A stretch of 64,000 nucleotides of DNA from Adineta vaga (Eukaryota; Animalia; Rotifera): positions 7,874,001-7,938,000 of the forward strand of contig CP075497.1 in the NCBI GenBank assembly GCA_021613535.1, read 5' to 3'. Shown here one piece after another: positions 1 to 47,577 of the stretch. The notes beneath the pieces were generated by a model. That model saw nothing but the letters and a program-made list of their open reading frames with translations. It had not been told where the DNA came from and made no database searches. Positions within the stretch are counted from its first letter, which is position 1. The number at the start of each line of letters is the position of its first letter. Made by a program: the position numbers and the translations under genes.

Positions 1-48
1 AACCATGTAATTGTAAATTACTATTAAAATCTTTATATGCATATGAAC

Positions 49-18835: not shown

Positions 18836-19188
18836 TGCTGAATTCAATTGGAAAAAAAAGAAACTTTTCCTGATAAATATATAAGAATAAATGAGACAAT
18901 AATCTAGAAAAGAAAAATCACATGAAGTAAATTGTACGATAGAAAATTTTGTTCTCTTTTCTCTGAATGCATATATATATATATATGTATCGGCCATTTT
19001 ACCCGTCTATCAAATAAATGGACGAGTAAGCGAAGAAAGAAAAAGCTAACCGCAGTAAGGGTTCAACTTACCGGACTGATACTTGAACTGATGGAGCAAG
19101 TGTGAGTGCGCACAAACATTGGTGGTCTCTTTTCTTTCACTTAAAGTGAAGAGAAAAATATGCATAAACATACGTACATACACGCATA

Positions 19189-19590
19189 CCCAGGTCAAAA
19201 CGTGTCCATCGGATCCTGCCGGACACCTTTCAAATCCGTTGTCAAACGGATGATCGGATCCGGTCGGCCACTTGTCAACGGATTCCGATGCAATCCATCA
19301 ACTTCCCTTGGTATCCGCTTATCGGATCCGACACTTTCCGACAAGATACATAAATTCGGAACCGATCAGATCCGATTCCCATATTCGACTGTTTCTGATC
19401 AGATCCGATGTAATCCGGTGTCAAGAAATTATCGGAATTTACAGTTTCACATGACACCGAATTCCGAGAAAATCCGTTCAGTTACTGCTATCAGAACTTG
19501 TCGGATTCTACAGGAACACAGGAGTTCCTTCGATCGGATTTTAACGCTGTCCGACAATATAGATCCGACAAGAACTTATCACAGGTAAAT
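19189..19590. repeat. Left-end subterminal repeats (ATCCG/CGGAT, TTCCG/CGGAA, both orientations), outer copy
   Basis: Many ATCGGATCC, GGATTCCGA and AGATCCGA motifs in a GC-richer 400-bp block next to the TIR. This is typical CACTA subterminal architecture. Confidence 0.85.
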
Positions 19591-21044
19591 GTTGGAAACA
19601 ATCGGAAAGTTACAGACGTCATTTAGCATAATGGTTAAACCTTAGTGAAATAAATAATAATGCCTAATTACATTTGCAACTTAATACGATATGGTTTGTC
19701 AAGCGAAATCGAACTTGATAGTGATTATGGTTATATGTATGCCAAATACAAGAATAATTCTGAAATGTTGGTAATTACAAGTAGTCATCATATACCGAGA
19801 AAAGAATTGCTTGAGTGTTAAACAATATATCAGAGGGATGGCAGGTTGTTTTTGGTATTGATTATACTATTATACGTTGACGCAGAAGAAGAAAATAATT
19901 TCTGGAAGAGAAATTATTAGAAATGATTTCAGATTGTGATTTTTCACTTTTAAAAAGAGATAGAAAACCAATGATTAAAAACAGCTGAAATTGGATAGAA
20001 ACTACGAAAAGGTATCCGAAATCGTGATAAAATCAGTAATATTCAAGTTGTAATTAAATCTTGATATCTAGGGATATCTAATGAATCTTATAAAATTTTG
20101 AATTTTTGAAAATCCAATATTCTAGTATTTACTTTGGATTCTTCAGGATATCTTATCTTTCTTATTAAATGCTAGTGCTGTTTAACCGTCTGTATTGAGT
20201 TTTGATCAACACAATATAACCTAATCTCTATTAGTGGAGATCGATTGAAATTCGTATCACCTCAGTTACTATGCTTTAACATAGTGGTCATACAGAAAGG
20301 ATAAACAAAGATTATTTATTTATAACTTATTATTGAGAGTGGATCTTGATTGAATATTATTGATAATCGTCGAATATTGAGTAAAATCTAATACAAACAA
20401 CGTGAACTCTCTCTGTGATCTTAAGCTATTGGACAGATATCAGACTATAACGATATTTTTTTGAATTAACTACAGATAGTTCCAAATAAATCTTTGATCA
20501 TATAGTCGATTCTAAAGTAATTTTTTCGTAAAAACTACTTGTAAACGACTATGATGAATGGTGCATTGATCTTTGCTTAAAGAAAATCTAATCAATATCT
20601 ATATTGGTCACATTTCAGTAAATATCTGACTTTATTTTTGCTGGTTATAATGTCCATGGTATAAATTTTGTATATTATTCATTTAATATTATGTAATGGA
20701 TCACAATCAACTGTATTTTGTCATTAAATTCTGAGAAGATGTCTGTTAAAAAGTCAATATTAAAAAATCATGTTCCGAACAGCTATATTGCAAGTTAGCT
20801 GCTTTTATCTGGTGACATCTATACATCGTATATTCATTGTAAGATGTACTTTCTATAAAATTTGAATATCTTGCTTATGTTTCTATAATAATAACAAGAT
20901 ATAGATCCCTATTACAATGTTAAATGCTTTCTTTTGATTTTCATTTATTTTAGATATCTGAATGTAAACATATTACTAGTGAAAGAAATAGTTTTAACGT
21001 TTCAATTTTTGTTTTTATTCAAAGATTTTATCATTAGGTTGAAT

Positions 21045-24000
21045 ATGGATTTTGATCTTGGGCAACAACTTGAATTTGTCGAAAAAAGAAACTTTAAAAG
21101 ATCAATGGAATATTATGAAAAAAAGAAAAAAAAACGAAAATTTTATTGTGAAGAAGTACCAAATGAAAATGAATCATCTGATGCTATTTCTTTACTTCCA
21201 TCTCAAATTGATTTTACATCAAAACTCACACTAAATGACGAAAACAATAGTTTCTTGGAAAGACAGATGAACGACAATAGTTTGAAATATCAAGAGAATT
21301 TTGACAATAAAAATCGTTTAGAAGTTATCGAGATAGATAATAATCCGATTATTCATGATTCATTAAGTATTAATAGTTCATTATGGTTTGATGAATTTGA
21401 GATTACTCCTGAAAATTTATTACATTATTACACAAGCGTTTCGACCAAAGAATTTTGTTTGAAATTACTGATTTTCTTAAGAAATTCTCACACATGTAAG
21501 TTGCAAGCAAATCATTTATTATCATTTATTAGTTCAATACTTCCATCGCCAAATAATGTACCGAAGAAAATGGAAAATCTTTTACAACAATTAGAAATAG
21601 AAAGCAATACTTTCAAGAAACGTATGTTATGTACAAAATGTAATAGTTATGTACCACTTACGACAAGATCTTGTTTGAAATGTTCATCGAATGATTTTAG
21701 AAATTTTGCTTTCATATATGATATAGATATTGAAGAATATATCAAGAATATTTATATACGATTGAAAGTTGAAATCGATGAATATCGAAATCAACTTCGT
21801 TTGATGAATGATACAGATGGAAGTAATGATATAGGATTTAATTATCTTTATCAAGAATTACTGAAATATAATGTACATGATAATTTTATTACATTTTTGC
21901 TACATCTTGATGGTATTAGTTTATCCAAATCATCAAATATGAAGATGTGGTTGTTTTCCGGTTCAATAATCGAATTAAAGCCTCAATTACGTAGTCGTCG
22001 TTATAACAATGTTCTTTTCTCTTTTTGGTTTAGCTATAAAGAACCTGATGCGAAAATTTGGTTACGAAATTGTATGAACGTGATCAAAGTCATAAAAACG
22101 AAAGGTTAGATATGATTAAAATAGATCTTTTCCTATTCAGTTGGATTAGTGAGTTTTTTTGATAAAAGAAGTAAGGAAAAATGTTTTTTATGTAATTCAG
22201 AATTTTAACCATCGATTAATATCTAACAATACGTCTTACCAATGAAAACAATCTATTTCTCGTTTTGTTTTTCAACATATGTATGTATTGATCGTAAAAA
22301 CTATCGAGTACATCAGGAAGAAGAGAAAGAATGTTTAATCTATGATGAACAATATGATTTATATTAGAAAAATATAAACTTTTGCCGTTATTAAGACAGG
22401 AAAGTTGATTATCTTATGCTAACAGAATTATGAAAATAAAAATTATAAATCAATATAGAACAGTTAATATAATTTCAGATGAGTACTGAGTTCTGATTTT
22501 TCGAAAGAATCTTTTTATCTGTAGTTATTTTCGTACATGTTTATATTATATTAGTTTATTCTCTACCAAATACAATTAAATTCAGCTTATTTTTTATATT
22601 AACGCAATTATCATCAGTTTCGATAAGATAGAACGAATAGTGTATATATTTTATTTGTTTTAGGAATAATAATCAATGAAACACAGCGTATTAATATAAA
22701 ATTCCTATCAATCACTGGTGATTCACCAGCATTAAGTAAAATTCTTGAATTTAATGGACACGGTGGCTATTACTGTTGTAATTTTTGCTATACGCGTGGT
22801 GTCAATGTTGAAAAGAAAAGACAATACTTTTACGAAAAAAAAGTACTTCTTCGTTTTCCCGAAAAATATTACAAACAGTCAGAACAAGCTGAAAGATTAA
22901 AAGAAAAAGTTTGTGGACATAAAGGTGAATTATTGTTACAATACTTTTAAAATAATGTACTTACCGAGATATTCTTTGTAGCATATGATTCTCATAAGTT
23001 TATAAAAATATTTGAATAAAGAAATAAATTGTTATGTAAAAATACAAAGATTTCCAATGTAATTACATATTATTTCTGTAGAATTTGCTTAAGTAGATTA
23101 GAATTACAACAGCTTTTAACAATAATTTTTAAACTAATAAATATTAAAAATATTCAAAGAAGATTTTTCAAGAAAGATAGATTCAACTTTTCTATTTAAA
23201 TCATACAATATTTGTAATTTTAGGTATTTCGATTCTACAAGATATACTTGATGCTCCATTACCACATGCCATTTTAATCGATTACCAACATGTGACTTTG
23301 TTACGTCATGCGAAAACTGTTTTCGCTGAACTTTATAAACAATTTAAACCAAAAGAACGTGAACGATTCGATAACAGATTGAAGTATCAAGTATTTCCAC
23401 ATTTTTTTCATCGAAAGATGAAACCTTTCAAGGAGTTTTCATTCATAAAAGCAGTAGAATTACGAAATATTCTGTTTTATGGATTTTTACCATTATCGTT
23501 AGAGTTTATTAATATTCGACAACTATCTCATTTCGCTCTGTTTATTTGTTCGATCAGATTGTATCATTCACAGCCTTCTGTGTTTGGTGATGCAACACAA
23601 GGAATTGCTAGTAAATTATTCAATAAATATTACGAGGACCACAAAATATTTTATGAAAATATTCAAAATTACGTTTTACATATGCATCGCCATTTCGATA
23701 CACAATATCTAAATTATGGTTCTTTGGGAAATATTGGATGTTTCCATCAAGAAGATCTTATTGGTCACATAAGCAAAAACGTACATGGCTCCACCTATTA
23801 TTCTGATTTGATAGTACATTACTATAATATAGATTTTCATTTACACTCACATACTTTTCATACACAACTTGAAACAATTTCAAAACCAACAGACGTTAAA
23901 GTTGATATCAATCTTCATGATTATCCTATTATCATACAGTATCATGACAAATTATGCACGTGTTCAAATCGTCTAAATTGCATTTCGATTTATAGGCGAT

Positions 24001-24293
24001 GTCTTATACGTAATCATATGTTTCATTCGTTAATTTATAACAAAAGAGGAAAATCCAATAGTTATTTCATATCTTATTATGAATCATCAAATGATACTAA
24101 ATATTTTGGAAAAATTATATTATTTTTCTCATTTCTTACCACGAATTATGCTGTTATTCAACGTCATATTCAAAATAACAACTTCAGCTGTTTTTTCAAA
24201 TCATCATCATATTTTTCTTTACTAGAAAAACCATTAGATAGTTTCTTTAGTCTTTTATCCAAACAACCCCAGGTGATTCGATCCGACCGGTAG
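21045..24293 (+). pseudogene. Transposase of the outer copy, 3'-truncated by the inner insertion (exons 21045-22104, 22664-22924, 23224-24293)
   Basis: Same sequence as the inner transposase up to ...LSKQP. The last 37 aa are replaced by QVIRSDR* read from the inner right end. The displaced 3' tail lies at 37894-38009. Confidence 0.85.
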
Positions 24294-24530
24294 ATCCGAC
24301 AGGATCTTATCAGATCCGACATCGGATTGCATCGGAATCAGTCGGATTACCATACAAATCCGACCGGAACCCAACCGACTTACACCGGAATCCTAACCAA
24401 CGGATTCCGACGCGGATTGCACCGGACGGAATCCGACAGGAACTCCTCATAGAACAATGTCAGATTTCATCAGAATCCCGACTACGGAAAACACTGGATA
24501 TTGCCAGTATCCGACCGCTTCTTATCGGAA
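24268..24530. repeat. Right-end subterminal repeats (ATCCGA/TCGGAT), inner copy
   Basis: GATCCGAC, TCGGATT and CGGAATCC motifs clustered next to the TIR. Same motif family as the left end. Confidence 0.85.
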
Positions 24531-24568
24531 AAAGAGAAGCAAATCCAGCAATCAGCAACTTCCCCCGA

Positions 24569-26120
24569 GATTACACCTAGATTACACCAGATTACACCCA
24601 GATTACACTAGATTACACCTAGATTGCGGCATATTTTTCACGATTCCACCTATATTACACCTAGATTACACCAAACTACACCTAGATTACACGAGATGAC
24701 ACCCAGATTACACGAGATTACACCCAGATTACACGAGATTACACCTAGATTACACCAAATTACACCTAGATTGCGGCATATTTTTCACGATTCCACCTAT
24801 ATTACACCTAGATTTCACCTAGATTACACCAGATTACACCTAGATTGCGGCATATTTTTCACGATTCCAACTATATTACACCTAGATTACACCAAATTAC
24901 ACCTAGATTACACCTAGATTACACGAGATGACACCCAGATTACACGAGATTACACCCAGATTACACGAGATTACACCTAGATTACACCAAATTACACCTA
25001 GATTGCGGCATATTTTTCACGATTCCACCTATATTACACCTAGATTTCACCTAGATTACACCAGATTACACCTAGATTGCCGCATATTTTTCACGATTTC
25101 ACCTATATTACACCTATATTACACCAGATTACACCCAGATTACACCTAGATTGCGGCATATTTTTCACGATTCCAACTATATTACACCTAGATTACACCA
25201 AATTACACCTAGATTACACCTAGATTACACGAGATGACACCCAGATTACACGAGATTACACCCAGATTACACCAAATTACACCTAGATTGCGGCATATTT
25301 TTCACGATTCCACCTATATTACACCTAGATTTCACCTAGATTACACCAGATTACACCTAGATTGCGGCATATTTTTCACGATTCCAACTATATTACACCT
25401 AGATTACACCAAATTACACCTAGATTACACCTAGATTACACGAGATGACACCCAGATTACACGAGATTACACCCAGATTACACGAGATTACACCTAGATT
25501 ACACCAGATTACACCTAGATTACACGAGATTCCACCCGGATTACACCAGATTACACCCAGATTACACTAGATTACACCTAGATTGCGGCATATTTTTCAC
25601 GATTCCAACTATATTACACCTAGATTACACCAAACTACACCTAGATTACACGAGATGACACCCAGATTACACGAGATTACACCCAGATTACACGAGATTA
25701 CACCTAGATTACACCAAATTACACCTAGATTGCGGCATATTTTTCACGATTCCACCTATATTACACCTAGATTTCACCTAGATTACACCAGATTACACCT
25801 AGATTGCCGCATATTTTTCACGATTTCACCTATATTACACCTATATTACACCAGATTACACCCAGATTACACTAGATTACACCTAGATTGCGGCATATTT
25901 TTCACGATTCCACCTATATTACACCTAGATTACACGAGATTACACCAGATTACACCTAGATTACACGAGATTCCACCCGGATAACACCAGATTACACCTA
26001 GATTACACCAAATTACACCTAGATTGCGGCATATTTTTCACGATTCCACCTATATTACACCTAGATTACACGAGATTACACCAGATTACACCTATATTAC
26101 CTCAGATTACGCCTTGATTA
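24569..26120 (+). repeat. GATTACACC(T/C)A 9-10-bp satellite with higher-order structure, inner copy
   Basis: Tandem GATTACACCTA/GATTACACCCA/GATTACACGA variants are interrupted 13 times by TTGCGGCATATTTTTCACGATTCC(A)..TAT. The interruptions start at about 24624, 24771, 24845, 25003, 25077, 25151, 25288, 25362, 25583, 25730, 25804, 25888 and 26024. Confidence 0.95.
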
Positions 26121-26145
26121 TAGTATATTTTTCAAGATTAACCCT

Positions 26146-26663
26146 GATTACGCGCAAGAAATGTAATCTGTAATCTAGATTACGGCGAAGTGAAATGATG
26201 CTGGAAAAGTGAGCGGTATATATAGGCGCTGAGGTGTAATCTAGATTACGCGCAAGAAATGTAATCTGTAATCTAGATTGCGACGAAGCGAAATGATGCT
26301 GGAAAAGTGAGCGGTATATATAGGCGCTGAGGTGTAATCTAGATTACGCGCAAGAAATGTAATCTGTAATCTAGATTGCGACGAAGCGAAATGATGCTGC
26401 AAAAGTGAGTGGTATATATAGGCGCTGAGGTGTAATCTAGATTACGCGCAATAAATGTAATCTGTAATCTAGATTGCGACGAAGTGAAATGATGCTGGAA
26501 AAGTGAGCGGTATATATAGGCGCTGAGGTGTAATCTAGATTACGCGCAATAAATGTAATCTGTAATCTAGATTACGGCGAAGTGAAATGATGCTGGAAAA
26601 GTGAGCGGTATATATAGGCGCTGAGGTGTAATCTGGATTACGCGCAATAAATGTAATCTGTAA
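26146..26663 (+). repeat. 98-bp minisatellite, about 5.3 copies, inner copy
   Basis: Unit starts at 26146, 26244, 26342, 26440, 26538 and 26636. Each unit has GTAATCTAGATT(A/G)C (near-)palindromes and GGTATATATAGGCG. Confidence 0.95.
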
Positions 26664-27558
26664 CCGAGAATATTGTTATCACGGTAGGTCGCACAAAAAA
26701 AACCTTTTCGGAGACGATACGTCGTAATCGTTGTAGCAGATGTTAATCTGAGAAGTTTTGTATGTCGTGTGTTTCTATGATTGCTTTGATTTAGTGAAAG
26801 ATGGAGAAGGGCAACATGAAATATGTTCATATAGGTACAGGATATGTGATTTAGTTTACGTTGAAATTTAATCGTGCCATGTAGAATATCGGGATTAACA
26901 GGAACGAACGTTTGTAGTCAGTAATACATGGTGAAAGATATGGGTATATTTGAGTGAATGAGAACACAAATGGTAGGATTATTCTGCTTTAATCGTCAAA
27001 GTATGACGAAAGAGGCTGGTACTTATTTCTTCAATGAGTTGACTATGTAATGGTATAGGTGGTTGGATGCAAACTGAAAAGTAATCGTTTCATCGAAAAG
27101 AATGAACTGAATGTAATCAATGCAATACGTATCAGTTCTTAGTGTAGTTGACTTGTTTAGTTTTGTAGTATTAAGTTAGAATTTTGTTTTTTAAATGATA
27201 GTAGGGCTTTCTGTTCTGTAAGGAGATTTAAGAAAGTTTACGAAATGTATGCATTGTAATAGACGGTCGTGATGGTGAAACTCCGCGAGGTAACGACATC
27301 TGTTGCTCCTTTATATGTACATGTATGGTATTCTTTTTTAAATTAATAAATTTCTGCAAAATTAATATTCGACTGATTCGATTTCTATTTGAATGTTCTT
27401 GAACGATTACAGTGAATTAGGAACAAAAACCTCTATTGAACTGCAAAGTCTTCATTGGTTTGTTATTCCAGATGAATAAATACACCTGGATCGCAATACA
27501 TCTTCGATTGTTTCTTTAGTTGCTGTATTTTAAAATTTTTATTTTATTTTGGTCGATA

Positions 27559-28504
27559 ATGGTTCGAAAGAAAAGTGTTGTGAAACGTTCAAATGATGAA
27601 AAAGAAAATGATAATCCACTTTCCGAAAATGGTAAACGTAAAACTGCTCTTTTGTTATGTACAATTAGCACTGTTTTTGTAATGGATTCTAACTATTGAA
27701 TTAATGAATTTAGATAGTCCACTTGTAGCTGGTCAAAAACGATCAATTGAATTAGTTGATACAAATACTGTTGATGATAAAGAAATTGAAATCAAGAATT
27801 TGAAAAGACGATGTGCTGATCTGGAATATCGTGTTGAAATTCTAGAAAAAACTTGTTCTGGTAAGTTTGTAAGTTTTGATCGTATTTGTATTGTATTTTT
27901 CCAGTAATTCCTCAAGATATGGTGAGTATCCAAGAATTATGTGAAGAAATATCACAAAACTCGAATAATAATAAAGATGGTATTGCAGCAGGCGGTGATA
28001 TTAGTGGTTTTATGACAGGTGATATTGATGGTATTGTTCCAATGAATGTTCAGGATGTTGTAGTCGATTATAATGATACTGTTATTCCAACAAAGAATGA
28101 TAATAATGCTACTATAACATGTTCTGATAATGATGACACAACAGGACGTGGTTTTTCAACATTTACGATTGATAATAAAATATTGACTTCGCTGAAAAAA
28201 GATAGCAAGACAACAACTGCTCGTTCAATTCTTAAATATCTGTTTCCTGATCCACAATTTAACTGTAAACTTTCTGATGTTGATAAATTAATTGTTGATG
28301 AAATCATCAGTAAGTTAATCTTTGTTTATTTCTATATTCGTTTAATTGCATTACATAGAGTACGTCGAAGAAATGCATCCCGACGATACAGCAACAACTA
28401 CAGCAAAAGTCAAACATTCGATGTCAAATTATTTTGGTTCTATTAATCACAAGAAAAAGAAAGCGTTATTTCGATTAAATAAAAATCTTAAAACAAGCAA
28501 ATAA
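27559..28504 (+). CDS. Transposon accessory gene 2: coiled coil plus BEN-like domain, about 256 aa, 4 exons (27559-27631, 27714-27860, 27905-28309, 28359-28504), inner copy
   Basis: Three phase-1 GT-AG introns (82, 44 and 49 bp) give an open frame. It has a coiled coil 'EIEIKNLKRRCADLEYRVEILEK' and a C-terminal 'TTTARSILKYLFP...DVDKLIVDEIIKYVEEMHP...KVKHSMSNYFGSINHKKKK' that resembles the BEN helix pattern. Confidence 0.7.
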
Positions 28505-29688
28505 ACGTTCTCGGAGATAAATAATAAGATTTTCTTTGTGTTTTATATGTGAAACACGCTTTCGCCTTCTTTTGGTTTGTTTTCTTTACACAACTGTTTG
28601 TTTTTTTTTGTTGTTGAAATTCATTCGAAGAATGATTACAATATGAATTATTCTTCCATTTATATCTGTCGATTTTCTCATTATTGATCTTTTTTTCTCA
28701 TTTATGTTTATATTTAAACTCGTTATCAATGAGAGCGCCTCATTGTCGTCTTTTATTTGATTTATTCGAAAATGTCACTATACCAGAAGTACTAGTTTTA
28801 TGAAAAAAGCATTAGAAGTTTTGAATAAAGACTTTTAAAATTAATTGAACGTTTTTTATTTTCATAAACTTAATTGTTTGATCAATATCGAAAGAAACCT
28901 CGTTTCAATATATTCTTTTTGAATACCTCCTATTAAATATTATGAAATATGAGATAGAAATGCAATCTCCAAGAATTACACATGATGAAAGCGTTATACA
29001 AATTTGATTTGATGGAATAGATTCAAGTATTGATCCATTATCATGTTATCTATTAAATCATTTATCCTTAATCAGATACGTCTTTTAAACATAAAGTTGA
29101 TAAGAAATTCAGTTGAAAACACGAACAAGAAAGCATCAAAAACGGAAACGTGAAAGAACATGTTTTGATTAATAAAACTGATACTTATCTTGATGTAAAT
29201 TGTCGCTTTACAGTGAACAAAACAGCATTCTTTCATTATCATTTTCAGACTAACTTTTTATTCATTGAGTCGAAAATATATTGTTTAATAATTAGAATTA
29301 AAAATAAATGAATGATTCATTAGAAAAAATCTTATTTCTTCGAAATGATTTAGATTTTACTATTTCTTTCCCAATAGAATTTGATTACCGTGCATCATTT
29401 AAAGGCTGATGCTAGAAATTTTCTTGATGGTCTTGAACAATCAAATAATTACTTAATATTCCGTTGATTCATAATCAATTCCTAAATAATTATTGCGATT
29501 TCTTCTCAACTAAAATAATCAAATAAGTTTTTTATTTAAACGAAAAAAGGAGAAAAAGAAAACGAAATTGTATTCGATACATTTAAACAATGCTTGCAAT
29601 AAAACAAGCTAATCTTCTTCGTTTTATGCAAGAAAGGTTATGAAGAAGATCCAAATTAGCTCAATATGTATCAAATACAAGAACAGAA

Positions 29689-32234: not shown

Positions 32235-32696
32235 TCTTTATTATATAAAAGTAAAATCTAAAACAAAGGATTTAGGTAAAAAGTATAATGGAATCAAATC
32301 TTAAATAGTATTATCTTATGCTCTGTACTATGCAATTCAAATCATTATATACAATAGATAATACATATTAATACAATATTCTACTACCATAATGTTACAT
32401 TATACTATACATTAGATTACTAGAAGTTGAACATACTTTAAATATCTGAACAAAAGCTTCGAATCTTTTCTTTTTGTGTAATGAAACATGATTTCTGTAC
32501 TTAACATAGTTTAATGGGAAATAATTTCTAATTCAAAAACTCGCAATTGATCTATTTCGATGGTTACTTTCTAGGAATCATATGTATAACAGGATCATTT
32601 CTTTACATAATTGATTGGATTAAGAGAAAAGAGTTGTCTAAAAATGTATTTCTTTAATACATGTAATATAAAAATCGATACTAAAAGACAATACTT

Positions 32697-35600: not shown

Positions 35601-36035
35601 TAAGAAAATCAGTAATTTCAAACAAAATTCTTTGGTCGAAACGCTTGTGTAATAATGTAATAAATTTTCAGGAGTAATCTCAAATTCATCAAACCATAAT
35701 GAACTATTAATACTTAATGAATCATGAATAATCGGATTATTATCTATCTCGATAACTTCTAAACGATTTTTATTGTCAAAATTCTCTTGATATTTCAAAC
35801 TATTGTCGTTCATCTGTCTTTCCAAGAAACTATTGTTTTCGTCATTTAGTGTGAGTTTTGATGTAAAATCAATTTGAGATGGAAGTAAAGAAATAGCATC
35901 AGATGATTCATTTTCATTTGGTACTTCTTCACAATAAAATTTTCGTTTTTTTTTCTTTTTTTCATAATATTCCATTGATCTTTTAAAGTTTCTTTTTTCG
36001 ACAAATTCAAGTTGTTGCCCAAGATCAAAATCCAT
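32697..36035 (-). CDS. Intact EnSpm/CACTA TnpD-like (Transposase_21 family) DDE transposase, about 826 aa, 3 exons (36035-34976, 34416-34156, 33856-32697)
   Basis: Motifs CTKC..CLKC, 'LHLDGISLSKSS..MW....IELKPQLR', 'ITGDSPALSK...GHGGYYCCNFC', 'LIDYQHVTL', 'KAVELRNILFY', 'YVLHMHRH' and terminal 'YHEHD'. Canonical splice sites keep the frame open (2481 nt). Confidence 0.88.
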
Positions 36036-37489
36036 ATTCAACCTAATGATAAAATCTTTGAATAAAAACAAAAATTGAAACGTTAAAACTATTTCTTTCA
36101 CTAGTAATATGTTTACATTCAGATATCTAAAATAAATGAAAATCAAAAGAAAGCATTTAACATTGTAATAGGGATCTATATCTTGTTATTATTATAGAAA
36201 CATAAGCAAGATATTCAAATTTTATAGAAAGTACATCTTACAATGAATATACGATGTATAGATGTCACCAGATAAAAGCAGCTAACTTGCAATATAGCTG
36301 TTCGGAACATGATTTTTTAATATTGACTTTTTAACAGACATCTTCTCAGAATTTAATGACAAAATACAGTTGATTGTGATCCATTACATAATATTAAATG
36401 AATAATATACAAAATTTATACCATGGACATTATAACCAGCAAAAATAAAGTCAGATATTTACTGAAATGTGACCAATATAGATATTGATTAGATTTTCTT
36501 TAAGCAAAGATCAATGCACCATTCATCATAGTCGTTTACAAGTAGTTTTTACGAAAAAATTACTTTAGAATCGACTATATGATCAAAGATTTATTTGGAA
36601 CTATCTGTAGTTAATTCAAAAAAATATCGTTATAGTCTGATATCTGTCCAATAGCTTAAGATCACAGAGAGAGTTCACGTTGTTTGTATTAGATTTTACT
36701 CAATATTCGACGATTATCAATAATATTCAATCAAGATCCACTCTCAATAATAAGTTATAAATAAATAATCTTTGTTTATCCTTTCTGTATGACCACTATG
36801 TTAAAGCATAGTAACTGAGGTGATACGAATTTCAATCGATCTCCACTAATAGAGATTAGGTTATATTGTGTTGATCAAAACTCAATACAGACGGTTAAAC
36901 AGCACTAGCATTTAATAAGAAAGATAAGATATCCTGAAGAATCCAAAGTAAATACTAGAATATTGGATTTTCAAAAATTCAAAATTTTATAAGATTCATT
37001 AGATATCCCTAGATATCAAGATTTAATTACAACTTGAATATTACTGATTTTATCACGATTTCGGATACCTTTTCGTAGTTTCTATCCAATTTCAGCTGTT
37101 TTTAATCATTGGTTTTCTATCTCTTTTTAAAAGTGAAAAATCACAATCTGAAATCATTTCTAATAATTTCTCTTCCAGAAATTATTTTCTTCTTCTGCGT
37201 CAACGTATAATAGTATAATCAATACCAAAAACAACCTGCCATCCCTCTGATATATTGTTTAACACTCAAGCAATTCTTTTCTCGGTATATGATGACTACT
37301 TGTAATTACCAACATTTCAGAATTATTCTTGTATTTGGCATACATATAACCATAATCACTATCAAGTTCGATTTCGCTTGACAAACCATATCGTATTAAG
37401 TTGCAAATGTAATTAGGCATTATTATTTATTTCACTAAGGTTTAACCATTATGCTAAATGACGTCTGTAACTTTCCGATTGTTTCCAAC

Positions 37490-37891
37490 ATTTACCTGTG
37501 ATAAGTTCTTGTCGGATCTATATTGTCGGACAGCGTTAAAATCCGATCGAAGGAACTCCTGTGTTCCTGTAGAATCCGACAAGTTCTGATAGCAGTAACT
37601 GAACGGATTTTCTCGGAATTCGGTGTCATGTGAAACTGTAAATTCCGATAATTTCTTGACACCGGATTACATCGGATCTGATCAGAAACAGTCGAATATG
37701 GGAATCGGATCTGATCGGTTCCGAATTTATGTATCTTGTCGGAAAGTGTCGGATCCGATAAGCGGATACCAAGGGAAGTTGATGGATTGCATCGGAATCC
37801 GTTGACAAGTGGCCGACCGGATCCGATCATCCGTTTGACAACGGATTTGAAAGGTGTCCGGCAGGATCCGATGGACACGTTTTGACCTGGG
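37490..37891. repeat. Left-end subterminal repeats, inner copy
   Basis: Reverse complement of 19189-19590. Confidence 0.85.
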
Positions 37892-38471
37892 ACCATCTGA
37901 TTTATTTGACGTTGTTAATATTGATAATGTTATCAAGCATTGCATTACATTTGAGTTTCAACAGCAATTAATTGTAACGGAAGTATCTGCATATCATGAA
38001 CACGATTAAAAGTATTGTCTTTTAGTATCGATTTTTATATTACATGTATTAAAGAAATACATTTTTAGACAACTCTTTTCTCTTAATCCAATCAATTATG
38101 TAAAGAAATGATCCTGTTATACATATGATTCCTAGAAAGTAACCATCGAAATAGATCAATTGCGAGTTTTTGAATTAGAAATTATTTCCCATTAAACTAT
38201 GTTAAGTACAGAAATCATGTTTCATTACACAAAAAGAAAAGATTCGAAGCTTTTGTTCAGATATTTAAAGTATGTTCAACTTCTAGTAATCTAATGTATA
38301 GTATAATGTAACATTATGGTAGTAGAATATTGTATTAATATGTATTATCTATTGTATATAATGATTTGAATTGCATAGTACAGAGCATAAGATAATACTA
38401 TTTAAGATTTGATTCCATTATACTTTTTACCTAAATCCTTTGTTTTAGATTTTACTTTTATATAATAAAGA

Positions 38472-41017
38472 ATGATTCGATCTCCACGAAAAACAAATGC
38501 ACCGAAAAAGTTTTCACCATCACAACCAAATCTATATAGTCAAGAAAATTATTTACTTCGTTTTGATGATAATGATGAATTACTTATAGTAAAACGATCA
38601 AGTATCAGATCGATAATTGAAGATAAAGCAAATGTGGGAAAAGGTCAGAATTCTCGTTGTGCAACAATTGAAGCGAAAGGTATGATATATATATATATTC
38701 TCATTTAACAGAATAGTAAATTACAATGAGAAAGTTCACTAATAACATAGTATTAAATATCATACAATTCTCAGAAATGTATCAAATTCCTGTTAGAGAA
38801 GATAATATTCAGATAATTTCTCGAACTACATATATACATTACATGTCGCATACATGTTCTTTTTGTTTTGATTCTATAGGTTCATACAGTCAATGTAATA
38901 TAATGTATGAGCAATTGCAATTGGGACAGATGAATGCTACTGATGATGATGATGATGATCAAGAAGGTAAATACTATCTCATATCATTCTGCTTGACGAT
39001 ATGACGAGCATTTTGATTGCTTCTTTTTATCATGATCTAATGTTTGCGCTAAATATTCTAGAAGAAACTGATGATGTGCAAGGTGATGATAGAAACAATG
39101 ACAATAATGTTCAGTATAAGATACCGAGTATTCTTCTTTTTTCGTAGAAACAAATTATAATATTTGCCTTTTCTATTTTTTTTCTGCAGAGCAATCACTG
39201 TCAACAAAAAAAAGAAAATTGTCTTCGTGTTCATCTGAGAATAACGACGGTAAACGTATAGAAATAATCCTTTTCATTTCATATTGATTTATGCTATAGA
39301 ACCATTTTCATCTTAGAATCTTTCAGACGAGCAGATAAATTTTCAATTGAGAAAGCATTTTGATAGAAGCTACAAACAAGGCTAAATATTAAACAAGTAT
39401 TCATCCACTTTTATATTTTAGAAAACGTCGATTATCCTGATGTCACAACACGAAAAGATTTATCAATCAGTAAAAGTAAATATAGTACTAGTAAACTTTA
39501 AAAGAAGAAATCAAACATATAACTTATTTTATTTAGAAATTCGTCGATCTGCTGTGAATCTTTTAACAATGCAACGTATATTTCTCATGTAATTGTATCC
39601 GTTCATATTTTATTCTTATTGCTTTTTAGATACTACTATGAGTAATGGAAATAATAAAGAAAATGAAAGTGTCGAAGGTATGTATAACGATTCCAAAGAA
39701 ATTCTCAATCTAAGTGATTTTAAATGATGTGAATTCATTTATAATTATTTAAATATAAACATAATATATTTGTAGCTCAGGTAGTTTATCAAACAATTGA
39801 TGATATGCATCACACAATTTTACAACAACTCGAAAAGAAATTTTCAAGTTTCTCTAGGAAATTGAATCAAATGATTCCACATGCTGTAATGATATGCAAA
39901 TATGTGGTTGTTGGATTCGATATATTCTTTTATTTTTAAATTCTAGGTTCATCAGAACTTGGATTCATATCGAGAGAAAGATGAAATTTTTCCTAAAGAA
40001 GTCGTATGTATTATCAAATTTGCTCCATTGATTACATAGAGTATATGCTTTTTCTTAAAGATGTATGATAACAAAAACCTTCTAGAAATTCGTGCAAGAG
40101 ATATATTTGATTTCGGACGAAAAATTTTAAAAACATTATATACATCAGAAGAACTAGGTAGTTCTATTTTACCTCCAGCCCGGAGTCATCTAGCACGACC
40201 ATCTTTAGATCCCGTACGTTTTCATCTGTTTCACGGTAGGTATCTTTAATTGAATGCAAGATCGATTTTTGATTGTATCAATAAATATATGTCATATTTT
40301 CGATTATTTCTATAGCAGATAATCATCTGATATCCAACTAGAATGATATACCGAGAGATGAGTTGCTGTTGTATTTGCTATTTGTCTATTAACGAAATGT
40401 CGAAAAATCTACATATCTCTAAGTCAATTAATAGAAAACATCGTGATTTTCCATAGCTGTAATTAGAATGGATTACATTTAAAACAGTTGTTTAATTTAG
40501 TATTAATCTTTAATTATGAAAATAAAACTATGTTTTTCAAACAAACATTTATGAAAGCAATTATATGTCTAATTCTAAGAATGAATTATATATTGATTTC
40601 GACAGAGAACTTCTTTGAATAGATTGATTTGCTTGCAATCAGTGAAAATGAATGTCGATCTAATTTTTGATCACTTTGTTTTATATAGGAAGACTCTTGT
40701 GACAGGTTCATTTTTTTAAATATTTAATTCAAGCTGATATAGTTTCTTTTGGTATTTTGATGATAATATAACTTTTTTATTTCTTCCTCAAGGAATTAGT
40801 GTCCAAATATGTATATTTTTTAATTAAAATAAATATTTTTTCTTTAGAATCGATTCGAGTGAAATACAAAATATCTTCATTATATTATGATAACTGTTAT
40901 GCAAAGTTAGTACGACCAAAAATGTGTGATTTCCTTGTCGATGAACGCAAAAGACAAGGAAAAGCTTTAAAGCGACAATCTATGGACAATGAGGAACGGA
41001 ATCTATGCAATGACTAA
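38472..41017 (+). CDS. Transposon accessory gene 1 (BEN-like), outer copy
   Basis: Reverse complement of 29689-32234, with identical ORF translations. Confidence 0.72.
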
Positions 41018-42199
41018 TTCTGTTCTTGTATTTGATACATATTGAGCTAATTTGGATCTTCTTCATAACCTTTCTTGCATAAAACGAAGAAGATTAGCTT
41101 GTTTTATTGCAAGCATTGTTTAAATGTATCGAATACAATTTCGTTTTCTTTTTCTCCTTTTTTCGTTTAAATAAAAAACTTATTTGATTATTTTAGTTGA
41201 GAAGAAATCGCAATAATTATTTAGGAATTGATTATGAATCAACGGAATATTAAGTAATTATTTGATTGTTCAAGACCATCAAGAAAATTTCTAGCATCAG
41301 CCTTTAAATGATGCACGGTAATCAAATTCTATTGGGAAAGAAATAGTAAAATCTAAATCATTTCGAAGAAATAAGATTTTTTCTAATGAATCATTCATTT
41401 ATTTTTAATTCTAATTATTAAACAATATATTTTCGACTCAATGAATAAAAAGTTAGTCTGAAAATGATAATGAAAGAATGCTGTTTTGTTCACTGTAAAG
41501 CGACAATTTACATCAAGATAAGTATCAGTTTTATTAATCAAAACATGTTCTTTCACGTTTCCGTTTTTGATGCTTTCTTGTTCGTGTTTTCAACTGAATT
41601 TCTTATCAACTTTATGTTTAAAAGACGTATCTGATTAAGGATAAATGATTTAATAGATAACATGATAATGGATCAATACTTGAATCTATTCCATCAAATC
41701 AAATTTGTATAACGCTTTCATCATGTGTAATTCTTGGAGATTGCATTTCTATCTCATATTTCATAATATTTAATAGGAGGTATTCAAAAAGAATATATTG
41801 AAACGAGGTTTCTTTCGATATTGATCAAACAATTAAGTTTATGAAAATAAAAAACGTTCAATTAATTTTAAAAGTCTTTATTCAAAACTTCTAATGCTTT
41901 TTTCATAAAACTAGTACTTCTGGTATAGTGACATTTTCGAATAAATCAAATAAAAGACGACAATGAGGCGCTCTCATTGATAACGAGTTTAAATATAAAC
42001 ATAAATGAGAAAAAAAGATCAATAATGAGAAAATCGACAGATATAAATGGAAGAATAATTCATATTGTAATCATTCTTCGAATGAATTTCAACAACAAAA
42101 AAACAAACAGTTGTGTAAAGAAAACAAACCAAAAGAAGGCGAAAGCGTGTTTCACATATAAAACACAAAGAAAATCTTATTATTTATCTCCGAGAACGT

Positions 42200-43145
42200 T
42201 TATTTGCTTGTTTTAAGATTTTTATTTAATCGAAATAACGCTTTCTTTTTCTTGTGATTAATAGAACCAAAATAATTTGACATCGAATGTTTGACTTTTG
42301 CTGTAGTTGTTGCTGTATCGTCGGGATGCATTTCTTCGACGTACTCTATGTAATGCAATTAAACGAATATAGAAATAAACAAAGATTAACTTACTGATGA
42401 TTTCATCAACAATTAATTTATCAACATCAGAAAGTTTACAGTTAAATTGTGGATCAGGAAACAGATATTTAAGAATTGAACGAGCAGTTGTTGTCTTGCT
42501 ATCTTTTTTCAGCGAAGTCAATATTTTATTATCAATCGTAAATGTTGAAAAACCACGTCCTGTTGTGTCATCATTATCAGAACATGTTATAGTAGCATTA
42601 TTATCATTCTTTGTTGGAATAACAGTATCATTATAATCGACTACAACATCCTGAACATTCATTGGAACAATACCATCAATATCACCTGTCATAAAACCAC
42701 TAATATCACCGCCTGCTGCAATACCATCTTTATTATTATTCGAGTTTTGTGATATTTCTTCACATAATTCTTGGATACTCACCATATCTTGAGGAATTAC
42801 TGGAAAAATACAATACAAATACGATCAAAACTTACAAACTTACCAGAACAAGTTTTTTCTAGAATTTCAACACGATATTCCAGATCAGCACATCGTCTTT
42901 TCAAATTCTTGATTTCAATTTCTTTATCATCAACAGTATTTGTATCAACTAATTCAATTGATCGTTTTTGACCAGCTACAAGTGGACTATCTAAATTCAT
43001 TAATTCAATAGTTAGAATCCATTACAAAAACAGTGCTAATTGTACATAACAAAAGAGCAGTTTTACGTTTACCATTTTCGGAAAGTGGATTATCATTTTC
43101 TTTTTCATCATTTGAACGTTTCACAACACTTTTCTTTCGAACCAT
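42200..43145 (-). CDS. Transposon accessory gene 2 (coiled coil plus BEN-like), outer copy
   Basis: Reverse complement of 27559-28504. Confidence 0.7.
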
Positions 43146-44040
43146 TATCGACCAAAATAAAATAAAAATTTTAAAATACAGCAACTAAAGAAACAATCGA
43201 AGATGTATTGCGATCCAGGTGTATTTATTCATCTGGAATAACAAACCAATGAAGACTTTGCAGTTCAATAGAGGTTTTTGTTCCTAATTCACTGTAATCG
43301 TTCAAGAACATTCAAATAGAAATCGAATCAGTCGAATATTAATTTTGCAGAAATTTATTAATTTAAAAAAGAATACCATACATGTACATATAAAGGAGCA
43401 ACAGATGTCGTTACCTCGCGGAGTTTCACCATCACGACCGTCTATTACAATGCATACATTTCGTAAACTTTCTTAAATCTCCTTACAGAACAGAAAGCCC
43501 TACTATCATTTAAAAAACAAAATTCTAACTTAATACTACAAAACTAAACAAGTCAACTACACTAAGAACTGATACGTATTGCATTGATTACATTCAGTTC
43601 ATTCTTTTCGATGAAACGATTACTTTTCAGTTTGCATCCAACCACCTATACCATTACATAGTCAACTCATTGAAGAAATAAGTACCAGCCTCTTTCGTCA
43701 TACTTTGACGATTAAAGCAGAATAATCCTACCATTTGTGTTCTCATTCACTCAAATATACCCATATCTTTCACCATGTATTACTGACTACAAACGTTCGT
43801 TCCTGTTAATCCCGATATTCTACATGGCACGATTAAATTTCAACGTAAACTAAATCACATATCCTGTACCTATATGAACATATTTCATGTTGCCCTTCTC
43901 CATCTTTCACTAAATCAAAGCAATCATAGAAACACACGACATACAAAACTTCTCAGATTAACATCTGCTACAACGATTACGACGTATCGTCTCCGAAAAG
44001 GTTTTTTTTGTGCGACCTACCGTGATAACAATATTCTCGG

Positions 44041-44558
44041 TTACAGATTACATTTATTGCGCGTAATCCAGATTACACCTCAGCGCCTATATATACCGCT
44101 CACTTTTCCAGCATCATTTCACTTCGCCGTAATCTAGATTACAGATTACATTTATTGCGCGTAATCTAGATTACACCTCAGCGCCTATATATACCGCTCA
44201 CTTTTCCAGCATCATTTCACTTCGTCGCAATCTAGATTACAGATTACATTTATTGCGCGTAATCTAGATTACACCTCAGCGCCTATATATACCACTCACT
44301 TTTGCAGCATCATTTCGCTTCGTCGCAATCTAGATTACAGATTACATTTCTTGCGCGTAATCTAGATTACACCTCAGCGCCTATATATACCGCTCACTTT
44401 TCCAGCATCATTTCGCTTCGTCGCAATCTAGATTACAGATTACATTTCTTGCGCGTAATCTAGATTACACCTCAGCGCCTATATATACCGCTCACTTTTC
44501 CAGCATCATTTCACTTCGCCGTAATCTAGATTACAGATTACATTTCTTGCGCGTAATC
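44041..44558 (-). repeat. 98-bp minisatellite, outer copy
   Basis: Reverse complement of 26146-26663. Confidence 0.95.
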
Positions 44559-44583
44559 AGGGTTAATCTTGAAAAATATACTA

Positions 44584-46135
44584 TAATCAAGGCGTAATCT
44601 GAGGTAATATAGGTGTAATCTGGTGTAATCTCGTGTAATCTAGGTGTAATATAGGTGGAATCGTGAAAAATATGCCGCAATCTAGGTGTAATTTGGTGTA
44701 ATCTAGGTGTAATCTGGTGTTATCCGGGTGGAATCTCGTGTAATCTAGGTGTAATCTGGTGTAATCTCGTGTAATCTAGGTGTAATATAGGTGGAATCGT
44801 GAAAAATATGCCGCAATCTAGGTGTAATCTAGTGTAATCTGGGTGTAATCTGGTGTAATATAGGTGTAATATAGGTGAAATCGTGAAAAATATGCGGCAA
44901 TCTAGGTGTAATCTGGTGTAATCTAGGTGAAATCTAGGTGTAATATAGGTGGAATCGTGAAAAATATGCCGCAATCTAGGTGTAATTTGGTGTAATCTAG
45001 GTGTAATCTCGTGTAATCTGGGTGTAATCTCGTGTAATCTGGGTGTCATCTCGTGTAATCTAGGTGTAGTTTGGTGTAATCTAGGTGTAATATAGTTGGA
45101 ATCGTGAAAAATATGCCGCAATCTAGGTGTAATCTAGTGTAATCTGGGTGTAATCTGGTGTAATCCGGGTGGAATCTCGTGTAATCTAGGTGTAATCTGG
45201 TGTAATCTAGGTGTAATCTCGTGTAATCTGGGTGTAATCTCGTGTAATCTGGGTGTCATCTCGTGTAATCTAGGTGTAATCTAGGTGTAATTTGGTGTAA
45301 TCTAGGTGTAATATAGTTGGAATCGTGAAAAATATGCCGCAATCTAGGTGTAATCTGGTGTAATCTAGGTGAAATCTAGGTGTAATATAGGTGGAATCGT
45401 GAAAAATATGCCGCAATCTAGGTGTAATTTGGTGTAATCTGGGTGTAATCTCGTGTAATCTGGGTGTCATCTCGTGTAATCTAGGTGTAATCTAGGTGTA
45501 ATTTGGTGTAATCTAGGTGTAATATAGTTGGAATCGTGAAAAATATGCCGCAATCTAGGTGTAATCTGGGTGTAATCTGGTGTAATATAGGTGTAATATA
45601 GGTGAAATCGTGAAAAATATGCGGCAATCTAGGTGTAATCTGGTGTAATCTAGGTGAAATCTAGGTGTAATATAGGTGGAATCGTGAAAAATATGCCGCA
45701 ATCTAGGTGTAATTTGGTGTAATCTAGGTGTAATCTCGTGTAATCTGGGTGTAATCTCGTGTAATCTGGGTGTCATCTCGTGTAATCTAGGTGTAATCTA
45801 GGTGTAATTTGGTGTAATCTAGGTGTAATATAGTTGGAATCGTGAAAAATATGCCGCAATCTAGGTGTAATCTGGTGTAATCTAGGTGAAATCTAGGTGT
45901 AATATAGGTGGAATCGTGAAAAATATGCCGCAATCTAGGTGTAATTTGGTGTAATCTAGGTGTAATCTCGTGTAATCTGGGTGTAATCTCGTGTAATCTG
46001 GGTGTCATCTCGTGTAATCTAGGTGTAGTTTGGTGTAATCTAGGTGTAATATAGGTGGAATCGTGAAAAATATGCCGCAATCTAGGTGTAATCTAGTGTA
46101 ATCTGGGTGTAATCTGGTGTAATCTAGGTGTAATC
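44584..46135 (-). repeat. GATTACA higher-order satellite (TAGGTGTAATC on the + strand), outer copy
   Basis: Reverse complement of 24569-26120, with the same unit order. Confidence 0.95.
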
Positions 46136-46173
46136 TCGGGGGAAGTTGCTGATTGCTGGATTTGCTTCTCTTT

Positions 46174-46436
46174 TTCCGATAAGAAGCGGTCGGATACTGG
46201 CAATATCCAGTGTTTTCCGTAGTCGGGATTCTGATGAAATCTGACATTGTTCTATGAGGAGTTCCTGTCGGATTCCGTCCGGTGCAATCCGCGTCGGAAT
46301 CCGTTGGTTAGGATTCCGGTGTAAGTCGGTTGGGTTCCGGTCGGATTTGTATGGTAATCCGACTGATTCCGATGCAATCCGATGTCGGATCTGATAAGAT
46401 CCTGTCGGATCTACCGGTCGGATCGAATCACCTGGG
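46174..46436. repeat. Right-end subterminal repeats and TIR, outer copy
   Basis: Reverse complement of 24268-24530. Confidence 0.85.
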
Positions 46437-47577
46437 TAGCAAAAAGAAGCAACAGAAAGAGGATTTCTATGTATGAATGTTAACAAAACAAAACAGAAAA
46501 TTCAATTAGCGACGAAAAAAACAGCAAGCTACTATAGAACAGTGGCGTCTGTTGGGATAAATAACACATACAAAAAAAGAATTAATACTGTAGTTACTTA
46601 TGTGTCTTTTTTTGTTGTTATGTTGGATATAGAAAGATATATACAGCCTTTGGTTGCCTTCGCTCCTAATCGAGTAAGAGAAAAATATCTGTCTGTATTC
46701 GAGTTGATGATCAAGTAAGATTATGATTACGTTTTCTAATGATGATACTGAGTTTTTGTTTTGTTTCTCTGTCAATTAATTGAATAAACATGAGAATAAG
46801 ATAAACTTACATATTGAAGAGGAAAAAAAAGCATTATTTTGTTATTTGCATTAGAAGATGTTTAGCCAAGAAATAGTTATCAGAAATAAAAGGGTAAAAG
46901 ACAGTTTGTCACATGGAGAAAATAGAGAGAACTGCTTATACTGTCTTATTCGGTCAAAGCAAAGCAAACAAGACAAAGAAGAAGAACAACGGAAAGTTAT
47001 ATGAGAGAAAAAGAACAAAGAAAGAAAAAGAGGAAAAAAGAAAGAACAGAAGAAAAAGAGGAGAAAAGAAGTTGCATAGTTGAATCTCTCACGAAAGAAA
47101 GAAGAACGAAGAAAATCTTGAATACTTTTATAACCAATCAATAAAATGAATGTTATGTCGAAGATTGTAGATTTTATTTTTCGAGAAATTTTCAGATTTT
47201 TTTACTATAATAATATAATATGTATGCAATACTTATTCGATAGATGACACTATATAACAGCAATGCTATGATCATTGAAGTATATATATTCAATTTGTAT
47301 ATTATATTAAATAAAACATGACAGTTATACAATGCTGTTTGTATTTTTATACAGTCAACTAATTCATCCGTATAGTAAATTTGAATATGTTATTCAATCT
47401 GAAGAGTATACTATATGAATTTCAAGTGCTCCTAAATAACTCAATCGAATATTGAAGTCAACGACTGCAGATATTTCTTCTTTCTTATAAAAATTTATTT
47501 TCTATTTGGGATTGTATTCATATTTCAATAAGATTGTCAAACATGCATTCTTCAATCAATAATCAAGCGTCGCTAAA

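What the first reader, a model, noticed from the sequence alone, without database searches (positions are those of the whole stretch)
19189..46436. A 13.6-kb CACTA/EnSpm transposon inserted, inverted, into its own twin
Seen: four CCCAGGT ends at 19189, 24268, 37891 and 46436, with an outer TSD of TA and an inner TSD of AC. Removing the inner copy restores the transposase frame. Mirror sums are constant (57080, then 70706/70704). The only difference I found by eye is a homopolymer (T9 near 28601 vs A7 near 42097). Even the unstable satellite has the same unit order. Established: cut-and-paste elements such as Ac and Spm show local hopping. Inference: this is a very recent transposition, probably from the sister chromatid or homologue, so the family is currently active. 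That is notable if the host is a TE-poor bdelloid.
Basis: partly seen in the sequence, partly recalled or inferred. Interest (0 to 1): 0.85.

Follow-up and report, generated by a model that had tools for sequence, protein, structure and literature searches.

The report
Transposon jumped into its own twin
On chromosome 6 of the asexual rotifer Adineta vaga, a 13.6-kb cut-and-paste transposon sits upside down inside an identical copy of itself, which marks a very recent jump, possibly one that happened in laboratory culture; the process itself is well known.

Summary
The outer element is 19189-24267 plus 37894-46436. The inner element is 24268-37891, inverted. Both have 7-bp CCCAGGT ends and 2-bp target duplications (TA outer, AC inner). 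The copies differ by one 2-bp homopolymer indel in 13.6 kb.

The host is Adineta vaga (AV20-type assembly, chromosome 6). The transposase belongs to the CACTA-Mirage-Chapaev superfamily and is closest to Mirage (DUF1258) and Transposase_21. The ends are not CACTA. The D, D+CxxC and E motifs are intact. The insertion removes the last 37 conserved residues of the outer transposase; the inner gene is whole.

No other copy above 73% identity carries this transposase in the haploid assembly.

Public-run contigs show the exact empty site, so the locus is hemizygous and the homologue was not the donor.

In the 2021-study run, contigs break exactly at the inner junction. In the three other runs, filed in studies dated 2013, 2015 and 2022, a 10.4-kb contig runs through it. 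The jump may therefore have arisen in culture, but I never saw the junction contig itself, and contig depth could not give copy number.

This is a new member of a known kind. Its closest analogue is maize double Ds.

The parts
19189..24267 (+). Outer copy, left part (element positions 1-5079). It holds the 7-bp end CCCAGGT (19189-19195), subterminal GATCCGA/CGGATC motifs, transposase exon 1 (~21045-22106), exon 2 (~22666-22926) and exon 3 (~23226-24267). Exon 3 is cut 37 codons before its stop.
24268..37891 (-). Inner copy, complete (13624 bp) and inverted. The transposase is intact: exon 1 34974-36035, exon 2 ~34154-34414, exon 3 32700-~33854 (exon ends come from homologue alignment; splice sites were not verified). 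A second conserved gene region lies at ~29692-32237 (-). A third, BEN-like lead, lies at 27683-28443 (+). The 21-bp array is at 24568-26120 and the 98-bp array at 26146-26663.
37894..46436 (+). Outer copy, right part (element positions 5080-13622). It holds the last 37 codons of the transposase (37894-38006), the second gene region (~38469-41014), the third gene region (~42263-43023, opposite strand), the 98-bp array (44041-44558), the 21-bp array (44584-46136) and the end ACCTGGG (46430-46436).
19187..19188 (.). Outer target-site duplication TA; the second copy is at 46437-46438. The empty-site allele seen in public runs has a single TA.
24266..24267 (.). Inner target-site duplication AC; the second copy is at 37892-37893. 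The uninterrupted inner copy has one AC here.
28601..28609 (.). The only difference between the copies: T9 here against A7 at 42097-42103. It may be a long-read consensus error.

Best explanation
This is an autonomous 13.6-kb DNA transposon of the CACTA-Mirage-Chapaev (CMC) superfamily in Adineta vaga. It has 7-bp CCCAGGT inverted ends, subterminal GATCCGA motifs, a three-exon DDE transposase, two further conserved genes and a 2-kb satellite block. The locus on chromosome 6 is hemizygous: the homologue carries the untouched target.

A second copy was cut out and pasted, in inverted orientation, into exon 3 of the resident copy, duplicating the 2-bp target AC. The donor was most likely the same element on the sister chromatid after replication. 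The event is very recent: there are no substitutions in 13.6 kb, and it may have occurred within the laboratory line that was assembled.

The inner copy keeps an intact transposase. The outer copy loses its conserved 37-residue C-terminus.

Shown: the structure, the TSDs, the identity of the copies, the transposase family and motifs, the empty site, and a contig branch at the junction in one run. Inferred: the donor, the timing and continued activity.
For: Family-wide 2-bp TSDs: TA, AC, AT and GA in 4 of 6 element pairs, against a chance of 1/16 each.

The empty-site contigs read left flank, single TA, right flank in X1 and X12. This fixes the element boundaries independently of the assembly.

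In X1 the 4228-letter contig ends exactly at 24268 and the terminal 112-letter contig starts exactly at 24268. This is what the J1 branch predicts.

A profile of transposase exon 1 finds 1757 proteins. Long hits pass Pfam cut-offs for DUF1258 (P0104, 50 bits) and Transposase_21 (P0177, 42 bits). DUF1258 is the Mirage group and a close relative of the CACTA transposases (PMC3985635).

D (LHLDG), D (ITGDSPA) followed by CCxxC, and E (KAVE) all align with conserved columns.

Subterminal motifs occur only in the first and last 500 bp.

Only these two copies carry this transposase above 73% identity in the 100.8-Mb assembly.

The three laboratory samples (DNA of 2009, 2015, 2017) are known to have evolved independently (PMC8494291).
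Against: I never saw the J1-spanning contig itself; the listing is truncated. In X2, X5 and X12 a 10.4-kb contig runs through the insertion site, and the 3' terminus has a single left context. So the junction is absent, rare or cleaned away in those runs.

Only Logan contigs were available, not raw reads. Depth is internally inconsistent: in X1 the terminus is at 26 and the body at 48, and the body-to-flank ratio is 1.6-1.9 in X1, X2 and X5 but 0.6 in X12. Copy number therefore could not be checked.

Palindromes in the earlier AV13 assembly were artefacts (PMC8494291).

Direct Pfam hits of the window's own exons are below cut-off (21 bits against 33.1).
Confidence: 0.7

Rival explanations
1. 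The chromosome carries one element and the nested copy is a mis-resolved assembly graph. Junctions J1 and J2 would come from a minority of molecules, for example self-integration (autointegration) 'inversion circles' of an excised element. Such circles create exactly the same two junctions and the same 2-bp duplication. Alternatively they come from a subclonal variant in the pooled culture, and the assembler threaded every edge once.
For: Three of four runs give a contig straight through the site. Element depth in X1 is no higher relative to the flank than in X2 or X5. The earlier assembly of this species had artefactual palindromes. By geometry, an inversion circle has the form T5-A-rc(T3)-rc(B), which contains both J1 and J2 (my inference).
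Against: Non-replicating circles should be far rarer than a chromosomal copy, yet in X1 the branch was strong enough to break contigs at both predicted positions. A chimeric-read or scaffolding artefact would not produce exact element ends plus a 2-bp duplication.
Confidence: 0.13
2. The nested insertion is real but old. The two inverted copies are kept identical by gene conversion or recombination between them, so identity does not date the event and says nothing about present activity.
For: Homologous recombination and loss of heterozygosity are frequent in A. vaga laboratory lines (PMC8494291). Inverted repeats 5-8 kb long lying next to each other are good conversion substrates (general knowledge).
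Against: The locus is hemizygous with a pristine empty site. The junction signature is missing from three other runs of the same species label. Even the fast-evolving 21-bp and 98-bp arrays are identical unit for unit. The transposase is intact.
Confidence: 0.07
3. The insertion is real and recent, but the donor was another identical copy elsewhere in the diploid genome. That copy would sit at a hemizygous site on the haplotype left out of the haploid assembly. It would be a plain non-replicative jump with no local or sister-chromatid bias.
For: The body-to-flank depth ratio is similar in X1 (1.6) and in X2 and X5 (1.8-1.9), as expected if copy number did not change. A haploid assembly hides hemizygous insertions on the other haplotype.
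Against: In X2 and X5 the 3' terminus has only one left context, apart from old diverged relatives that I located in the assembly, so no second intact identical copy is visible. The chance of hitting the 13.6-kb twin from an unlinked site is about 1 in 7400. Contig depth is unreliable here.
Confidence: 0.1

Closest known systems
Mirage transposons of Caenorhabditis (Pfam DUF1258), within the CACTA-Mirage-Chapaev (CMC) superfamily
   Same: 2-bp target-site duplication without sequence preference. DDE transposase whose relatives pass the DUF1258 cut-off. DUF1258 is the Mirage group (PMC3985635).
   Different: The window's own exons score below the DUF1258 cut-off. The element is 13.6 kb with three genes and a 2-kb satellite block. 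Close homologues occur only in bdelloids.
En/Spm (CACTA) elements of plants (Pfam Transposase_21)
   Same: Same superfamily by transitive homology. Subterminal short-motif clusters at both ends. More than one element-encoded gene. D...D-CxxC...E layout.
   Different: The termini are CCCAGGT, not CACTA. The TSD is 2 bp rather than 3 bp. The extra genes show no detectable similarity to TnpA; there is only a weak BEN-like lead.
Maize double Ds (one Ds inserted, inverted, into an identical Ds) and closely linked inverted Ac/Ds pairs
   Same: Same architecture: an element nested upside down in its twin. Such pairs present transposase with wrongly oriented end pairs and cause sister-chromatid fusion, breakage, deletions and inverted duplications (PMC3239180; the double Ds structure itself is from my memory of Doring et al. 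1984).
   Different: Different superfamily (hAT) and host. Here the elements are autonomous and seven times longer. No breakage or rearrangement has been looked for.
Inverted-duplicate transposon loci that trigger silencing (maize Ac composite insertions; Mu killer)
   Same: An inverted duplication of transposon sequence that could be read through to give double-stranded RNA (bioRxiv 10.1101/2020.01.07.897926). Here, read-through from the outer transposase promoter would reach the inner copy in antisense.
   Different: No RNA or small-RNA data were examined, so this is only a possible consequence.

Membership tests
CMC (CACTA-Mirage-Chapaev) superfamily of DNA transposons | DDE transposase homologous to Transposase_21 (PF02992), DUF1258 (PF06869) or DUF1280 | tested here: met
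   The direct hit is weak (DUF1258, E 2.5e-4, 21 bits against a 33.1 cut-off). A profile of exon 1 retrieves proteins at E<=1e-23 that pass the cut-offs for DUF1258 (50 bits) and Transposase_21 (42 and 29 bits). The atlas lead agrees.
CMC (CACTA-Mirage-Chapaev) superfamily of DNA transposons | Catalytic D, D, E with a CxxC motif just after the second D | tested here: met
   LHLDG (exon 1), ITGDSPA...CCNFC (exon 2) and KAVE (exon 3) align with conserved columns of ten relatives. That this is the CMC signature is from my memory of Yuan and Wessler 2011.
CMC (CACTA-Mirage-Chapaev) superfamily of DNA transposons | Short TSD of 2-3 bp (2 bp in Mirage) | tested here: met
   TA and AC in the window, and AT and GA in two relatives. 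Two older relatives show no match. The empty site in public runs has a single TA.
CACTA / En-Spm in the narrow sense | Termini beginning CACTA (or CACTG) | tested here: not met
   All ends of this family and of its 70%-identical sister family begin CCCAGG.
CACTA / En-Spm in the narrow sense | Subterminal arrays of short motifs and a second, TnpA-like DNA-binding gene | tested here: inconclusive
   GATCCGA/CGGATC motifs occur only in the first and last 500 bp. Two further gene regions are conserved at 64-66% in the sister family. They have no Pfam match and only a sub-threshold BEN-like atlas lead of 0.87.
Currently active transposon family | Intact autonomous copy, identical copies with TSDs, and presence/absence polymorphism | tested here: met
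   The inner transposase is open in all three exons. There are 0 substitutions in 13.6 kb. An empty-site allele is present.
Currently active transposon family | New insertion arising between dated samples of one clone | tested here: inconclusive
   The contig branch at the junction is seen in X1 only. X2, X5 and X12 run through the site. These are cleaned Logan contigs, the junction contig was not displayed, and the run identities are coded.
Currently active transposon family | Transcription of the transposase | not tested

The most novel reading that the evidence does not exclude
The inner copy jumped during laboratory culture, after the 2009 and 2015 samples and the assembled line had separated. 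That would make it a DNA transposition caught in real time in an ancient asexual animal. The resulting double element would behave like maize double Ds or Mu killer. It would be a hemizygous mid-chromosome site prone to breakage and rearrangement, and a source of hairpin RNA that could silence its own family.
Probability: 0.3. Interest if true: 0.7.

Novelty: new member of a known kind. Interest (0 to 1): 0.5.

Why it matters
Bdelloid rotifers are the classic test case for how asexual lineages cope with selfish DNA. Recent activity has been argued mainly from LTR retrotransposon site polymorphism among wild isolates (PMC7943196). This locus offers a single, easily assayed marker for DNA-transposon activity in the reference clone. 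It has an intact autonomous element, an empty homologous site and a self-insertion that may differ between dated laboratory samples. It also creates 5- and 8.5-kb perfect inverted repeats in mid-chromosome. Such repeats can be followed for rearrangement, gene conversion or small-RNA production. For annotators, it shows that the outer transposase gene model is interrupted by a transposon, not by an intron.

Tried and rejected
1. Depth as copy number was rejected. Logan contig depth is inconsistent within one element (X1: 26, 37 and 48) and between runs, and GC content does not explain it.

2. Extra flanks of the element ends, seen as loose ends, were tested as possible donor sites. All map to old, diverged relatives already in the assembly.

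3. Direct Pfam scans gave nothing above cut-off for exon 2, exon 3, bdelloid full-length homologues or the two accessory gene regions.

4. A 40-sequence alignment of full-length and partial homologues (A1) was too ragged to use. I used the exon-1 alignment A2 instead.

5. I looked for the 2013 assembly's alleles through the flanking gene. Only the AV20 protein I4U23_029731 is on record, so no independent assembled allele could be fetched.

6. Paper searches for this element (Adineta vaga with CACTA or EnSpm) found no description of it.

Each exon was searched by reference.

Full report
OBSERVATION

The repeat finder returns three perfectly complementary arm pairs whose mirror sums are 57080, 70704 and 70706. 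I cut out 24268-37891 and one of the two AC dinucleotides. The restored outer element (13622 bp) then aligns with the reverse complement of the inner one (13624 bp), with no mismatch and a single 2-bp gap. That gap is T9 at 28601-28609 against A7 at 42097-42103.

The outer flanks share TA and the inner flanks share AC. The uninterrupted inner copy has one AC at that spot. The 21-bp (about 74 units) and 98-bp (5.3 units) arrays lie inside the 100% identical arms. The ORF running into the junction (23292-24293, 333 aa) shares 326 residues with the intact 363-aa ORF of the inner copy, then ends after 7 foreign residues.

HOST AND LOCUS

The window is positions 7,874,001-7,938,000 of a 13.89-Mb contig in a 100.8-Mb, six-contig assembly. 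The neighbouring gene at 14591-16150 is 100% identical to Adineta vaga protein I4U23_029731. This is the chromosome-level AV20-type assembly of A. vaga (PMC8494291). The locus is mid-chromosome, whereas most relatives of the element lie near chromosome ends.

WHAT THE ELEMENT IS

Bdelloid homologues tie three open segments of the element into one transposase gene, at element positions about 1857-2918, 3478-3738 and 4038-5192. I searched each exon by reference and did not join them.

Exon 1 alone gives only a sub-threshold DUF1258 hit. A profile of exon 1 with 20 bdelloid homologues (A2) found 1757 proteins at E<=0.001. Of the ten longest of the 150 listed hits (all E<=1e-23), eight matched DUF1258, Transposase_21 or both. 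Some were above the curated cut-offs: P0104 with 50 bits for DUF1258, and P0177 with 42 bits for Transposase_21. DUF1258 is the Mirage group and a close relative of the CACTA family Transposase_21 (PMC3985635).

Aligned to those relatives, the window's exons carry the conserved D of LHLDG, the D of ITGDSPA followed by CCxxC, and the E of KAVE. GATCCGA/CGGATC motifs occur 7-8 times in the first 500 bp, 3 times in the last 500 bp, and nowhere else.

Across the family the TSD is 2 bp with no preferred sequence. TA, AC, AT and GA match in four of six pairs. The element is therefore a CMC-superfamily transposon, Mirage-like in its TSD and transposase. It is not a CACTA element in the narrow sense, because its ends are CCCAGGT.

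Two more regions are conserved at 64-66% in a sister family: element positions about 5655-8200 on the transposase strand, and about 9449-10209 on the other strand. They have no Pfam match. The second has a weak BEN-like atlas lead of 0.87.

FAMILY CENSUS

In the haploid assembly only the two window copies carry this transposase. The next best are two copies of a sister family at 73% identity. Sequences 80-87% identical to the element ends are 2.1-2.4-kb non-autonomous derivatives, made of the 5' 1.5 kb plus the 3' 0.45 kb. The autonomous element is thus a one-locus family here.

PUBLIC RUNS

Only Logan contigs were available, not raw reads. There are three results.

(a) Contigs in X1 and X12 read left flank, one TA, then 28 to more than 255 letters identical to the right flank. 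The X2 flank contig, which carries four alternative-haplotype SNPs, likewise ends 28 letters past 19188; I take those letters to be the same empty-site junction, though they were not displayed. The X5 flank contig also carries haplotype SNPs but stops at 19188. The insertion is therefore hemizygous, and the element boundaries and TSD are confirmed without reference to the assembly.

(b) In X1 (2021 study, probably the assembly's own sample) the body contig is 4228 letters and stops exactly at 24268. The terminal contig is 112 letters and starts exactly at 24268. This is the branch pattern that junction J1 must create in a k=31 graph.

(c) In X2 (2015), X5 (2022) and X12 (2013) one contig of about 10.4 kb runs from 20041 through the site into the uninterrupted sequence. 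In X2 and X5 the terminal contig carries 30 letters of the outer right flank without a break. There the junction is absent, rare or removed by graph cleaning.

Two cautions apply. The junction contig itself was not in the truncated listing. Cleaning does remove real single-copy links: in X12 a contig passes the point where the filled allele rejoins.

Depth could not settle copy number. Within X1 the same element reads 26, 37 and 48. The body-to-flank ratio is 1.6-1.9 in X1, X2 and X5 but 0.6 in X12. GC content does not explain this.

Other flanks seen at the element ends belong to old relatives already in the assembly.

MECHANISM

The simplest reading is ordinary cut-and-paste transposition with a 2-bp staggered cut at the target. 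The target happened to be exon 3 of an identical element.

The homologue is empty, in the 2013-study run as well as in X1. No other identical copy is visible. The likeliest donor is therefore the same element on the sister chromatid after replication. This is the local, replication-linked behaviour known for Ac and En/Spm (established knowledge; PMC3239180 for sister-chromatid events).

With zero substitutions in 13.6 kb, the 95% upper bound on age is about 1.1e-4 divided by the per-site mutation rate, in generations. That is 10^4-10^5 generations for rates of 1e-8 to 1e-9 (my calculation; the rate is not known for this species). The run comparison suggests a much younger date, within the independent culture history of the samples described by Simion et al..

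CONSEQUENCES (INFERRED)

The outer transposase lacks 37 residues that are conserved in homologues. The inner copy remains autonomous.

The locus now holds perfect inverted repeats of 5.08 kb (8.5 kb apart) and 8.5 kb (5.1 kb apart), with four element ends in mixed orientation. In maize this geometry gives chromosome breakage and alternative transposition. It can also seed silencing through read-through double-stranded RNA.

RIVALS

An assembly mis-resolution fed by self-integration circles or by a subclonal variant would give the same junctions. I cannot exclude it without long reads, and rate it about 0.13. An old insertion homogenised by conversion (0.07) fits poorly with the hemizygous pristine site and the identical satellites. 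A donor on the unassembled haplotype (0.10) would change only the origin of the copy, not the event.

NOVELTY

Nested self-insertion, local hopping and ongoing TE activity in bdelloids are all known (PMC7943196). This is a new family member and a clean instance, and I found no paper describing it. Its value lies in being a ready-made assay locus. It may also be a transposition captured between dated samples of one clone.

Noticed in passing
L020 (G000:C6:13793550-13803549) and L023 (G000:C6:664500-674499): A sister family has the same three-gene layout and CCCAGG ends and is 64-73% identical to this element. It has two copies, near opposite ends of chromosome 6 and in opposite orientation. They are 99.8% identical over 8 kb (13 mismatches). 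This is either another recent transposition or a subtelomeric exchange.
   Followed up: partly
G000:C1:16158540-16159631, C3:113234-114737, C5:140126-141217 (L011-L013): Three diverged non-autonomous copies share an identical 30-bp flank. The copies were therefore spread by segmental duplication between subtelomeric regions of three chromosomes, not by transposition.
   Followed up: partly
window 19189-24480, runs X1, X2, X5, X12: The body contig of the element has 1.6-1.9 times the depth of the flank contig in three runs but 0.6 times in the 2013-study run. Terminal pieces are shallower than the body. It is unclear whether this is noise, extra body copies on the other haplotype, or extrachromosomal copies.
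   Followed up: partly
window 24568-26120 and 44584-46136: The 3' subterminal 1.5 kb is an array of about 74 imperfect 21-bp units built on GATTACACC (53 exact hits in one copy). It is followed by 5.3 units of 98 bp. The motif differs from the GATCCGA motif at the ends, so it may bind one of the two accessory proteins.
   Followed up: no
window 2143-3828 (-): A 561-aa open frame contains a strong tetratricopeptide-repeat block (TPR_12, E 5e-44).
   Followed up: no
window 54431-54970 (-): A 179-aa open frame has near-threshold VWC and TILa cysteine-rich domain matches, probably an exon of a secreted protein.
   Followed up: no
window 14591-16150 (+): This gene (I4U23_029731; 519-aa exon of a 684-aa protein) is conserved at 70-80% across Adineta and Rotaria and has A. 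vaga paralogues at 45-60% identity. It has no Pfam domain. It lies 3 kb from the insertion site.
   Followed up: no
window 18664-19118: Flank contigs of X2, X5 and X12 carry the same SNPs (18711 A>G, 18718 C>A, 18730 A>G; 18794 C>T in X2 and X5 only). That is about 0.6% divergence, and it marks the empty-site haplotype.
   Followed up: partly
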